Assembly: GCA_021613535.1 (NCBI GenBank)
Contig: CP075496.1
Location: 9,362,001-9,426,000, forward strand
Reading direction: 5' to 3'
Length of the DNA: 64,000 nucleotides
From: Adineta vaga
Taxonomy: Eukaryota; Animalia; Rotifera
Shown: one piece after another, positions 28,601 through 36,210 of the stretch
Layout of the letters: the number at the start of each line of letters is the position of its first letter
Numbering within the stretch: position 1 is the first letter of the stretch
The notes under the pieces: generated by a model
Told to the model about the DNA's origin: nothing
Seen by the model: only the letters and a program-made list of their open reading frames with translations
The model's database searches: none
Program-made: the position numbers and the translations under genes

Positions 28601-30201
28601 ATGTCTTTACTTAAACATTTAACAACTACAACTGAAATTGAACAATCATCATCATCAATAATTGATCTAACAGATGAAAATCCTGATTTGAATTGAATAT
28701 GATGTATTTAAGTGGAACGATTCGATCAAAAGTGAATCGGTAGGAGAAAATGAACAATGCAACTATATGAAATAAATGTAAACAAGAAGCATTGAACCAA
28801 AACATTCATATAGAGAAACGAATTGATTATGTTTCAGCTGAATTAGAATATTATTCTTCAATTAAAGATGGATCTCTAGAAATGTCTGCTGTTGATGGTG
28901 TATGGCAAAGTGATGGTTTAATACTGGTTAATATCAAAGAATCATTAATTACAAATATAGCATCATTCGAAAATGTGCCGGAACAAGAAAAAGATTGGCA
29001 TCCTAATACGAATCAACAAATATTAGATCTGGTTCATCCATCATTATTTTGTCTTATTAATGAAGTTTCAAGAATTATTATTGATCAAAATCAATTGGTT
29101 AATCTTTAAAATGCTATAGAACATATCGGTGACGGAGAAATTATTGATATGAACTCAAAAGCTAATATATCATCAATAAAAATGCAAAGAAGAGTATCAT
29201 CGAGTTATACGCGATCGAATACATATCAATGGTTACCAGCTGGATTTAGTGTTTCCCCAACTGGTCAAGTTAAAATTGAATCTTATATTAATAATTTACA
29301 TCCTATTGAACAAATTTTTGAATATGTTTTTTTCCTTTATTTAACAAAGTTTTAACAGATTTAATTGATGTGAAACCCAATCGACTCAAAATGGACCCAT
29401 ATAATTGGTATGATCAATCAGATGAAAACGATCTTGAAGTAGATAGTGATGATGATGATCCAATGGAGTCTTTGTCATTAAATATCCGTGATTTAACTAA
29501 ATTTCAAATGCCTATATTGTCATCTTGAAAAATCGATTTACCTGGAAGAAAATTACAAATTATTGTTAACTTAGCAAATATTATTTTAACACCAGATAAT
29601 CGAACAAATGATGGTGGTGTTTGGCATGTTGAAGGAATGGAAAATGAACATTGTTGCTTCAGGAATATATTACTATTCAAGTTCAAATCTGACTCAATCA
29701 GATTTACAATTTCGAACAGCTATATGTGAACCATATTATGGACAAGATGATCATCGAGGTCTTCGAAGAGTCTATGGTTTGGCTGATGAAAGTCCATTGA
29801 ATCAATTATTAGGTTCAGTAATTACACAAGAAAATCGTTGTATTGCATTTCCAAATATTTACCAACATCGTGTAGCACCATTTCAGTTGAAAGATCCGAC
29901 ACAACTAGGTGTGCGCAAAATTCTTGTCTTTTTTCTAGTAGATCCATCACTTCGAGCTATATCAACTGCTCATGTTCCGCCACAACAATTTCAATGGTAT
30001 CACAATATAATCCGTAATATTACTCCCTTTGATCAATTAACATCCATAGTCATTGATAGAATTTTGAATTATGTTGATTATCCGATGACATTATAGGAAG
30101 CAAAACAATATCGAGAAAAATTAATGGTAGAAAGAAAATATTTTATTGCACAAAATACCAAATTATCATTTGAAAGACCGTTTTCATTATGTGAACATTA
30201 A
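28601..30201 (+). pseudogene. DUF4246-family (fungal/actinobacterial, 2OG-Fe(II) oxygenase-like) pseudogene
   Basis: Ordered motifs DWHPNTNQQILDLVHPSLF, YQWLP, SYINNLHP, LQIIVNLANIILTP, GGVWHVEGMENE, IVASGIYYY, IAFPNIYQHRVAPF, RKILVFFLVDP and FERPFSLCEH*. Several nonsense codons and frameshifts. Confidence 0.88.
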
Positions 30202-31214: not shown

Positions 31215-32006
31215 ATGGCTGCAATATTTGATACGCATGAAACACAAAATACATCTGACAATTACAATCAAATGTTGGATAATTTTATCAAAAAACGATT
31301 AAATCTTGTTCAAAATGATGCACATCCATGTTTACAGAAAAAGCTTTGCAAAAAAGGTTCACAATGTCCCTTTATCGGTTTACCAAATGATACGTGTTTA
31401 TTTCATCTGACAGACGAGTGTAACTATGGAAAAAAATGTCGATATACTCATTATGATGAATATGCAAAAATATACAAAGATGCAAAACACGAATTTAAAA
31501 AGATGCTGGAAGAAATGCGTTTAAATGCTAAAAAAGCTATAGAACTCGACAAAGAATGGTTGGATCAAAATACACGTGTATGTCCAAAGTGCACTGTACC
31601 AGTAGAAAAGATCAATGGTTGTCCATCAATGTCATGCCCAGTTTGTCAAATACAGTTCAATTGGGATCAAATGAAATATGCAAAAGGTGCTGCTAATCTA
31701 CACAAATTTGATCGAGCACTAAATGAAGCAGAAAATCTACGTTTACGACCATTGTCTGAACAGAAGATTAATGTGATCGTTATTGCATCGGCAGGAAAAG
31801 GATATAGTATAAATCTTGCATTATCCGATGCTCAAGTGGAAGACATTATGAAAGAAATGGAAGAACGAACGAAGATTCCAGTTAACCGACAGCGAATGAT
31901 ATCTTGTGGGAAAGAATTATGCAAAGAAAAATCAATCGCAGAATATGCCATTAAGAATGGCAGTATTATTTTCTTAGTTCAACGCTTACCTGGTGGGTCG
32001 AATTAA
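31215..32006 (+). CDS. CCCH zinc finger + RBR RING2(Rcat)-like + C-terminal ubiquitin-like domain protein
   Basis: CLFHLTDECNYGKKCRYTH (C-x7-C-x5-C-x3-H); EWLDQNTRVCPKCTVPVEKINGCPSMSCPVC; IPVNRQRMISCGKEL…YAIKNGSIIFLVQRLPGGSN*. Intronless, 263 aa. Confidence 0.88.
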   Translation: MAAIFDTHETQNTSDNYNQMLDNFIKKRLNLVQNDAHPCLQKKLCKKGSQCPFIGLPNDTCLFHLTDECNYGKKCRYTHYDEYAKIYKDAKHEFKKMLEEMRLNAKKAIELDKEWLDQNTRVCPKCTVPVEKINGCPSMSCPVCQIQFNWDQMKYAKGAANLHKFDRALNEAENLRLRPLSEQKINVIVIASAGKGYSINLALSDAQVEDIMKEMEERTKIPVNRQRMISCGKELCKEKSIAEYAIKNGSIIFLVQRLPGGSN

Positions 32007-34527: not shown

Positions 34528-36210
34528 ATGGATCATTTGGATGTAGTCTACAGTATTAATCAACGAATTAAGACATTACAAGAAAAAATTGAAAAGTTAC
34601 GAGCAAAAAGTGCAGAAAAAGGTAAAGGAATTGATGTTGATACTGAACATCGTATTGATGATATAAATATGAAAATCAATGAACTAATATTAGAACGTAC
34701 TCGTGAGCTTAAAAGAGTACGATGGAGTGAGAAAAGAAAACCAAAAGTTAAACCAACTCCAACACCTATGGTCGAAGCCTCTTCTCCATCTTTACCAGAA
34801 CCAGTAGTTATCGAACGAACTCCTTCGCCTGTTCCAATCGTACTTCAATCTATTCTTGCACCATCTACACTCAAAGTATCTGATGTACAGGTTGGAACGG
34901 ATTCTACAACGTTGAAAATGGTTCCGACTTGGTTTAAGTCTGACAATGATGACGAAGCTTTGGATGGTATTGTTTATCCAGAAGAAAATATCGATCATCA
35001 ACAGATTGTCACAGTGGCACGGTTTCGAGCAGTATTTGGACAATCAAGAGATTTTACTCTCCATCCATTAGATACGAGTGAACGATCGACAGAAACGTTA
35101 ATACTGTCGCTTGATGCTTTTGCTCGACAATTTGGTGGACAATTGAGTTTTACTAATCGAGATTTAACGTTTGAAAATAGTGCAGAAAATGCTACTTGTG
35201 GTGTACCTAATTTAGGTAGTGCTCATTTACTTGCTAATAGTAATGTACCAACAGCAAATTTTTCATTTATTGTCGAACTTGACTATGATAGCGAACTTGC
35301 TCGTTCAGAAGAAACAATGGAAACATTTATTATTAATTTTGCTGTCGCTATTGCTCAAGTACTTGGATGTAAGAAAGAATACGTTCGAATATTTTCCATT
35401 GATAAAATAGATGGACAACACGGTTTCGTGCAAGTTAATTTTGGTTTAACAACAGCCAATCAAGAAAATACAGAATCTCTGGCCGTTGAATTACAAGTAA
35501 GTTAAAAAATCGTACACGAATGAATAGATTTCTATATGACTTTATTAAATTGTTAGGACATGGCAAAGTCAGGTTTTGGTGATAATGAAGTTCTACAGTT
35601 TGTTCAATTGGGTGAATATGAATATAAATGGCGATCCGTTTTATCATATTTAGAATTAAACCCATCAGATTTTGATCCACGTTTCAATTTTGATTATACA
35701 CGACCTGGTCTACCTGAACAGCAAGAACGCGGTAATCAACCATATTTTTTACCTCTAGGTTGGTATCGTCATGCTCTGAATGTTAGTCAAAAATATTCAG
35801 ATGGTGCTATTTGGCTTGGTCATGATAATAGTTCTGGTGAATGGCCCGTTGCTTTTCATGGTACACATTCCTATGCAGTTGGAAGCATTGCACGACATGG
35901 ATTGTCTGTTGGTACATCGACACGCGATCATATGCTTGAAGAAGCCGTTCAACAGAAAGGCCCTACAATGAATCGACCAGGACTATATCTAACGACGCAT
36001 TGTAATGGGGGTTCTGATGCATACGCAACAACATTTGAAGTACAGAATGGTGATCAAACTGAAATATTTCAAATTGTATTTCAATGTCGAGTAAAACCTA
36101 ATTCATTTACAGTTCATACGTCTTGTGTCACCAAAGGTCATGACTGGCGTGTTGTTGATCCCACGGCAGTTCGACCATACGGTTTATTGCTCAGAAAAGT
36201 GGATACATGA
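34528..36210 (+). CDS. Coiled-coil / Pro-rich / SEA-like / PARP-like ART-domain protein, 2 exons
   Basis: Exon 1 34528-35496, 60-nt GT-AG intron 35497-35556, exon 2 in phase. Motifs FDPRFNFDY, RGNQPYFLPLGWYRHALNV, EWPVAFHGT, GLYLT, FQCRVKP and VRPYGLLLRK. Confidence 0.82.

What the first reader, a model, noticed from the sequence alone, without database searches (positions are those of the whole stretch)
31215..32006. CCCH finger + lone RBR catalytic (Rcat) domain + cleavable C-terminal ubiquitin-like domain in one 263-aa protein
Seen: one canonical CCCH finger (aa 61-79) preceded by a degenerate one. Then an Ariadne/Parkin-type RING2 segment (EWLDQNTRVCPKCTVPVEKINGCPSMSCPVC) that keeps the catalytic-position Cys (C136) but has Ser at the His position and has lost the 'FCWxC' Zn ligands (FNWDQ). 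Then a ubiquitin-like domain with I44-, K48- and R72-equivalent residues, ending RLPGG-SN. Established: RBR ligases need RING1-IBR to bind E2 and Parkin carries its Ubl N-terminally; a di-Gly followed by a short tail is the precursor form of conjugatable modifiers. Inference: after removal of SN the whole RNA-binding protein could be conjugated to targets (an ISG15/FAT10-like modifier carrying cargo), or Rcat could accept its own Ubl. I do not recognise this architecture from characterised proteins.
Basis: partly seen in the sequence, partly recalled or inferred. Interest (0 to 1): 0.82.

Follow-up and report, generated by a model that had tools for sequence, protein, structure and literature searches.

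The report
Ubiquitin ligase core carrying own tag
A rotifer gene, one of a small undescribed family, fuses a probable RNA-binding zinc finger, the bare catalytic core of a ubiquitin ligase and a ubiquitin-like tag with an intact attachment end, so the protein may attach itself to targets without the docking parts such ligases normally need; this has not been tested.

Summary
Observation confirmed. The 263-aa single-frame ORF in this bdelloid-type genome holds a double zinc finger, an RBR-type Rcat knuckle with C136 at the catalytic position, and a C-terminal ubiquitin-like domain ending RLPGG-SN. No RING1 or IBR lies in the 64-kb window. About a dozen metagenomic relatives (30-70% identity; bdelloids plus unidentified, compositionally different eukaryotes) share the domain order. 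C136 is invariant (12/12). In a Ubl only ~39% identical between members, R42, R72, L73 and G75 equivalents are invariant, and GG is kept in 10/11. One member stops exactly at GG, another has RLRGG. dN/dS is 0.21. Corrections: the first finger is not degenerate (H/C-P-C-x-C-x5-C); loss of the His and of FCWxC is common in complete RBRs. Against: Pro at position 74 may block processing; expression and activity are untested. The closest precedent is avian OASL; a 2014 review knew no isolated Rcat. This scan had not noted it on other DNA in this genome.

The parts
31215..32006 (+). Whole ORF, 263 aa, single open frame; single full-length copy in the genome
   Evidence: dN/dS 0.21 against a bdelloid relative
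31323..31367 (+). First zinc finger of the double module, H37-P-C39-x5-C45-x5-C51 (His/Cys as inferred first ligand)
   Evidence: 95 instances of the unit among hits, H or C at the first position; C45 and C51 near-invariant
31395..31451 (+). CCCH zinc finger, aa 61-79
   Evidence: Pfam zf_CCCH_4 E 9e-5, below gathering score; weak matches to CCCH proteins in PDB; ligands near-invariant
31455..31571 (+). Long helix, aa 81-119, leading into the Rcat; its end resembles the linker that precedes Rcat in RBR ligases
   Evidence: AlphaFold model, pLDDT 77-86; parkin alignment starts at aa 108-111
31551..31673 (+). Lone Rcat (RING2) knuckle, aa 113-153: Zn site 1 (C123, C126, C141, C144) kept, site 2 absent; catalytic-position C136 at 31620-31622; S138 in place of His
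31764..31997 (+). Ubiquitin-like domain, aa 184-261, 30% identical to ubiquitin, ending R257-L-P-G260-G261 (GG at 31992-31997)
31998..32003 (+). Two-residue tail (SN) after the di-glycine; 0 to 8 residues and unconserved in relatives

Best explanation
A self-loading ubiquitin-like modifier. Shown: the gene is under purifying selection; the family keeps together a zinc-finger module, an Rcat with its catalytic-position Cys, and a Ubl whose conserved residues are those that ubiquitin uses for E1 activation (R42, R72, GG); RING1 and IBR are absent. Inferred: (1) a host protease removes the short tail (not needed in the member that stops at GG); (2) an E1 activates the GG end of the whole protein, with or without passing it to an E2; (3) because the Ubl is on the same chain as the Rcat, the activated thioester is already tethered beside C136, which does the job RING1 does in RBR ligases, and the Ubl end moves onto C136 of the same or a neighbouring molecule; (4) the charged protein discharges onto a lysine or hydroxyl near whatever the fingers bind (probably RNA or an RNP), or onto itself. 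In members without the His, discharge should be slow and the charged state long-lived; Pro74 could make conjugates hard to remove.
For: C136 invariant in 12/12 although it is not a Zn ligand in the Rcat fold. R42, K48, R72, L73, G75 equivalents 11/11 and G76 10/11 in a Ubl with median 39% pairwise identity, with differing Gly codons; L8, I44 and H68 equivalents vary. In a convenience control, 5 of 20 other divergent Ubls kept R72 plus GG (Fisher p 0.0006; members are not independent). Tails are 0-8 residues and unrelated; L097 has a stop right after GG; L093 ends RLRGG plus 5 residues. No RING1-IBR nearby, while controls score to E 1e-42. Precedent for each step: HOIP RING2-LDD without RING1-IBR makes linkages with E1 alone, and parkin IBR-RING2 works without RING1 (PMC3463842); chicken OASL is conjugated whole through its C-terminal Ubl, mostly to itself, and is made with a tail (PMC8764230); the His matters for discharge, not loading, in HOIP, and RNF216 is active without it (PMC7458406); Pro at the neighbouring position 73 allows conjugation but blocks removal (PMC5419743).
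Against: Pro at the R74 position (10/11) could block the protease step that 9 tailed members would need; no paper on R74P was found. E2-independent RING2 activity is described as weak and probably not physiological. The structure model does not place the tail with confidence (last block pLDDT 36) and its coordinates could not be read. His and third triad positions vary. One member (P0029) has RLPG-V and one (P0009) lacks a site-1 Cys.
Confidence: 0.45

Rival explanations
1. Non-conjugated adaptor. The Ubl is an integral domain that binds proteins or RNA, the tail packs against the Rcat or a partner, Pro74 prevents processing, and the Rcat is a structural zinc knuckle. The protein links an RNA target to ubiquitin-pathway factors.
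For: Pro74 in 10/11 and tails in 9 of 10 GG members. Model pTM 0.68 suggests packed domains. Integral C-terminal Ubls exist, e.g. SF3A1 binding U1 stem-loop 4 (PDB 8id2) and mammalian OASL. His absent in 8 of 12.
Against: The I44 patch used by most ubiquitin receptors is the variable part (I, L or Q), while the E1-facing residues are fixed. A member ends exactly at GG and one has RLRGG. A structural knuckle does not need C136.
Confidence: 0.25
2. Split or minimal E3 for ordinary ubiquitin. The Rcat accepts normal ubiquitin from a partner that supplies RING1/E2, or straight from E1; its own Ubl tail sits in the active site as a tethered donor mimic that keeps it off until the fingers bind RNA.
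For: C136 invariant; the residues kept in the Ubl (R42, R72, L73, GG) also face Rcat in donor-ubiquitin complexes (own knowledge); RBRs are typically autoinhibited, parkin by its own Ubl (PMC3940038). The genome has more than 25 other Rcat-like loci that could be partners.
Against: HOIP mutants do not complement in trans. No partner gene is linked: neighbours differ between bdelloid copies. A pure mimic would not explain a family-wide short, free tail better than a precursor does.
Confidence: 0.18
3. Conjugated by the ordinary host E1-E2-E3 system (as avian OASL), or acting as a bait for pathogen deubiquitinases; the Rcat Cys has no part in its own conjugation.
For: OASL precedent; two other genes in this genome end in Ubl-GG plus three residues without any Rcat (ankyrin-Ubl, L048 and L055).
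Against: Leaves the invariance of C136 and the strong constraint on the Rcat segment (dN/dS 0.12, the lowest of the five segments) unexplained.
Confidence: 0.12

Closest known systems
RBR E3 ligases (parkin, ARIH1/HHARI, HOIP, RNF216)
   Same: Rcat segment with Zn site 1, catalytic-position Cys and the preceding linker helix; parkin also carries a Ubl.
   Different: No RING1, no IBR, no second Zn site; the Ubl is C-terminal, 30 residues after the Rcat, and ends in a free or nearly free GG. A 2014 review knew no protein with an isolated Rcat (PMC3940038).
Avian OASL (OAS domain plus C-terminal tandem Ubl)
   Same: RNA-sensing part at the N-terminus, C-terminal Ubl with GG and a short tail; the whole protein is conjugated, mostly to itself (PMC8764230).
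   Different: OASL has two Ubls ending LRLRGG and no ligase domain; here one Ubl ends RLPGG and sits beside an E3 catalytic domain.
ISG15, FAT10, NEDD8 (type I ubiquitin-like modifiers)
   Same: Beta-grasp fold, R42/R72 equivalents, GG followed by a removable tail.
   Different: These consist of Ubl domains only and use separate E1, E2 and E3 enzymes; none has Pro at position 74 (own knowledge).
SF3A1 C-terminal Ubl (integral, RNA-binding)
   Same: C-terminal Ubl in an RNA-associated protein; structural match Z 11.0.
   Different: SF3A1 is not conjugated and its basic tail binds RNA (own knowledge); the tails here are not basic and not conserved.
CCCH plus E3 RNA-binding proteins (makorin, roquin, unkempt; own knowledge)
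   Same: CCCH fingers joined to a ubiquitin-ligase domain.
   Different: They use a canonical RING that binds E2, have no catalytic Cys and no C-terminal Ubl.

Membership tests
RBR E3 ligases | RING1 domain (E2 binding) | tested here: not met
   A RING1-IBR profile from nine RBRs of this genome finds held-out RBR loci at E 1e-5 to 1e-42 but nothing under E 0.19 in the window or in the family loci; no RING Pfam hit.
RBR E3 ligases | IBR domain between RING1 and Rcat | tested here: not met
   Only one IBR-fold segment per protein, and it is the one with the GC catalytic motif.
RBR E3 ligases | Rcat with Cys at the catalytic position | tested here: met
   C136 aligns with the parkin catalytic Cys; invariant in 12 members.
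RBR E3 ligases | Two Zn sites in Rcat | tested here: not met
   Site 1 kept; F-N/D-W replaces FCWxC in all members. The same loss occurs in complete RBR-like genes of this genome (L009, L065, L070, L072, L073, L085).
RBR E3 ligases | Catalytic His (common, not universal) | tested here: inconclusive
   Ser here; His in 4 of 12 members, Ser 6, Gln 1, Asn 1. RNF216 is active without it.
RBR E3 ligases | Cys-ubiquitin thioester intermediate | not testable with these tools
   Needs an in vitro charging assay.
Type I ubiquitin-like modifiers / avian OASL-like | Beta-grasp ubiquitin fold at the C-terminus | tested here: met
   Pfam ubiquitin above gathering score; fold matches.
Type I ubiquitin-like modifiers / avian OASL-like | Conserved di-glycine at or within a few residues of the C-terminus | tested here: met
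   10 of 11 members, tails 0-8 residues.
Type I ubiquitin-like modifiers / avian OASL-like | LRLRGG motif of ubiquitin, ISG15 and avian OASL | tested here: not met
   QRLPGG here; Pro in 10 of 11, Arg in one.
Type I ubiquitin-like modifiers / avian OASL-like | Processing, E1 activation and conjugation to targets | not testable with these tools
   No experimental data.
CCCH RNA-binding zinc fingers | C-x7/8-C-x5-C-x3-H spacing | tested here: met
   C61-x7-C69-x5-C75-x3-H79; Pfam score 22.8 bits is under the cut-off of 29 here, but relatives P0004, P0005 and P0008 pass it.
CCCH RNA-binding zinc fingers | RNA binding | not testable with these tools
   Inferred from the finger type only.

The most novel reading that the evidence does not exclude
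A one-chain conjugation system: a eukaryotic protein that is modifier, E3 catalytic centre and targeting domain at once, loads its own C-terminal glycine onto its own Rcat cysteine without RING1 (perhaps without E2), and attaches itself, hard to remove, to RNA-associated targets; passed among microbial eukaryotes and into bdelloid rotifers.
Probability: 0.3. Interest if true: 0.88.

Novelty: new variant of a known kind. Interest (0 to 1): 0.7.

Why it matters
RBR ligases are defined by the RING1-IBR-Rcat triad, and isolated Rcat domains were thought not to occur in nature (PMC3940038). This family is a natural, selected, lone Rcat. If tethering the modifier replaces RING1, it gives a 30-kDa system to test what RING1 and E2 really contribute, whether the E2-independent activity seen in vitro for HOIP and parkin fragments has a natural use, and how Pro74 affects processing and removal. 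It would also extend whole-protein conjugation through a C-terminal Ubl (avian OASL) to invertebrates and microbial eukaryotes.

Tried and rejected
Upstream RING1-IBR exons: none in the window or upstream of L089. Pseudogene or chance ORF: rejected by dN/dS 0.21 and a dozen relatives. Recent break-off from one of this genome's RBR genes: on a short 60-column tree the 12 family Rcats group together (SH-aLRT 81, not starred) apart from 18 RBRs of this genome; weak but consistent. Viral origin: viral contigs gave only an ordinary ubiquitin. Loss of His and FCWxC as a sign of a dead domain: rejected. Genome-wide DNA pattern for RLPGG-stop: at chance level, 57 against 65 control matches. Atlas searches by features and shape: only leads under 0.8 and Ubl-only matches. 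Paper searches for the architecture, RLPGG, R74P, RBR lacking RING1, bdelloid RBR, and the run accession of L093: nothing relevant. Bacterial promoter scan: not applicable, at chance. One pairwise comparison failed on a coordinate slip and was not needed.

Full report
Setting. The window lies on contig 4 of a 100.8-Mb, six-contig, 30% GC eukaryotic genome. It is the only full-length copy in the genome.

Checking the observation. Pfam finds ubiquitin at aa 194-258 (E 5.6e-11, above the cut-off), IBR_1 at 119-150 (E 3.5e-5) and zf_CCCH_4 at 61-79 (E 9e-5), the last two below their cut-offs. Residues 108-150 match parkin RING2 (E 4.5e-9) and the RING2 of ARIH1, ARIH2, HOIL-1 and CUL9. C136 sits at the catalytic Cys, S138 at the His, Q147 at the third triad position; C123, C126, C141 and C144 form Zn site 1; the site-2 Cys pair is gone. 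An AlphaFold model from 11 sequences (mean pLDDT 75.5, pTM 0.68) shows fingers, a 39-residue helix, a small beta knuckle, a linker helix and a ubiquitin fold; fold searches confirm the Ubl and say nothing about the rest.

The family. The word search found two relatives at 69% and 46% identity. A metagenome scan added partial ones. Because the claim rests on how far the architecture is shared, I ran the full profile search with the part before the Ubl. It gave further proteins with fingers, Rcat and C-terminal Ubl in the same order: P0004, P0006, P0007, P0009, P0029, P0153, plus P0014 (Ubl on the next exon of L093) and the partial P0005 and P0054. None carries an informative name. Two contigs are bdelloid by their neighbours: L089 has a BET gene 76% identical to this genome's and L024 a gene 85% identical; these neighbours map elsewhere in this genome, so the gene is not in a fixed neighbourhood. 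Five sequences, including the window's and both verified bdelloid lines, fall on one side of a branch (90/99, not starred). The others have coding GC from 0.21 to 0.67, which points to several unrelated eukaryotes; I could not name them. Transfer from a microbial eukaryote into bdelloids is plausible but not shown.

Is a RING1-IBR part missing from the model? A profile of RING1-IBR from nine RBRs of this genome finds held-out RBR loci at E down to 1e-42 but nothing in the 64-kb window or in the 10 kb upstream of the L089 copy. L090, L092, L097 and L022 have an in-frame stop 0-5 codons before the start codon. L090, L091 and L097 look like whole mRNAs (about 70 bases, the ORF, a short 3' part); I recall those JGI sample series as soil metatranscriptomes but could not verify it. 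So the lone Rcat is the family's normal state. A short upstream exon in this rotifer cannot be excluded without transcripts.

What selection keeps. Against L021, dS is 0.80 and dN 0.17 (ratio 0.21); the Rcat segment is the most constrained (0.12) and the Ubl is at 0.25. C136 is invariant in 12 of 12. The His position holds His in four, Ser in six, Gln and Asn in one each. In the Ubl, 30-45% identical to ubiquitin and 39% between members at the median, the R42, K48, R72, L73 and G75 equivalents are invariant in 11 sequences and G76 is kept in 10; L8, I44 and H68 equivalents vary (I44 is Gln in three). Position 74 is Pro in ten and Arg in one. Tails are SN, SD, L, F, LID, DIQL, SRIAL, an 8-residue one, or nothing: L097 has a stop codon right after GG. 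The one exception to GG (P0029, RLPG-V) lies on an AT-rich contig whose upstream part is split over three frames, and its G is followed by a possible splice donor; it may be a broken or spliced copy. In a rough control, 5 of 20 other divergent Ubls kept R72 plus GG; family members share ancestry, so the p-value (0.0006) overstates the case.

The first finger belongs to a recurring double module H/C-P-C-x-C-x5-C followed by CCCH, seen 95 times among the hits, with His and Cys exchanging at the first position as a metal ligand would. Loss of FCWxC is seen in complete RBR-like genes of this genome and in 54 of 87 Rcat motifs among the (query-biased) hits. RNF216 is active without the His, and in HOIP the His is needed for discharge but not for loading (PMC7458406). 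These features therefore do not mark the domain as odd or dead; the absence of RING1-IBR and the C-terminal Ubl do.

How it most likely works. RING1 serves to hold the E2-ubiquitin thioester near the Rcat Cys. If the activated Ubl is part of the same chain, about 30 residues after the Rcat, it is already held there. This explains in one step why RING1-IBR could be lost and why C136 and the E1-facing Ubl residues are kept together. HOIP RING2-LDD forms linkages with E1 alone, and parkin IBR-RING2 works without RING1, although the authors call this weak and probably unphysiological (PMC3463842). Chicken OASL shows that a whole RNA-sensing protein can be conjugated through a tailed C-terminal Ubl, mostly to itself (PMC8764230). 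Every step here is inferred; I give the model 0.45. Its weak point is Pro74: Pro at the adjacent position 73 permits conjugation but blocks cleavage of NEDD8 and ubiquitin (PMC5419743), so Pro74 could stabilise conjugates but could equally stop the tail from being removed. Rivals: non-conjugated adaptor (0.25), minimal E3 for ordinary ubiquitin with its Ubl as a tethered inhibitor (0.18), host-conjugated modifier or bait with a passive Rcat (0.12).

Comparison with what is known. It is not an RBR ligase by definition (RING1 and IBR tested, absent), but it may work like the second half of one. It meets the sequence criteria of a conjugatable Ubl except the LRLRGG motif. A 2014 review states that no protein with an isolated Rcat had been found (PMC3940038); my searches found no later description, but the library lacks most subscription journals. 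Earlier notes of this scan near the locus concern other genes and word searches were empty.

Limits. Model coordinates could not be read, so the distance from G261 to C136 is unknown. 

Verdict. A real, selected, undescribed domain arrangement shared by bdelloids and other eukaryotes; a new variant built from known parts, with a specific and cheaply testable mechanism. Interest 0.70; the most novel reading (one-chain self-conjugating system) has probability 0.3 and would deserve 0.88.

Noticed in passing
L002 (G000:C5:3207856-3208101, -); L025, L026, L028; P0011, P0015, P0019: A second family uses the same double zinc-finger module (44-49% identical) followed only by a hydrophobic, probably membrane-anchoring C-terminal helix, in proteins of about 135 aa.
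   Followed up: partly
L048 (G000:C5:16564252) and L055 (G000:C5:4732608): Two ankyrin-repeat-like proteins end in a Ubl with GG plus three residues (RLIGG-YRH, NLNGG-YTH): more candidates for whole-protein conjugation in this genome.
   Followed up: no
L014, L052, L053, L054: A family of divergent Ubls (about 60% to ubiquitin) with RLRGG followed by a shared extension of about 100 aa starting MY(H/D)(F/W)TSGR; probably cleavable fusions.
   Followed up: no
window 28792-30201 (+): DUF4246 gene directly upstream, in pieces over several frames with an in-frame stop at 30094-30096 before the last 35 codons; probably a pseudogene.
   Followed up: partly
window 34528-36210 (+): Two-exon-looking gene whose second part has an HGT motif and a later YLT motif that recall PARP-like ADP-ribosyltransferase folds (from memory); no Pfam hit.
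   Followed up: no
P0010, P0012, P0013, P0016-P0018, P0022-P0024 and others: The H-P-C-x-C-x5-C plus CCCH double finger recurs in tandem in many protist-like proteins; Pfam covers only its second half, so the module has no model of its own.
   Followed up: partly
31 hits grouped in the tree (e.g. P0077, P0082, P0086, P0090): A large group of RBR-like proteins with a one-zinc Rcat, mostly Gln at the His position and a GxxHN motif after the F-x-W; I recall such proteins from giant viruses, not checked.
   Followed up: no
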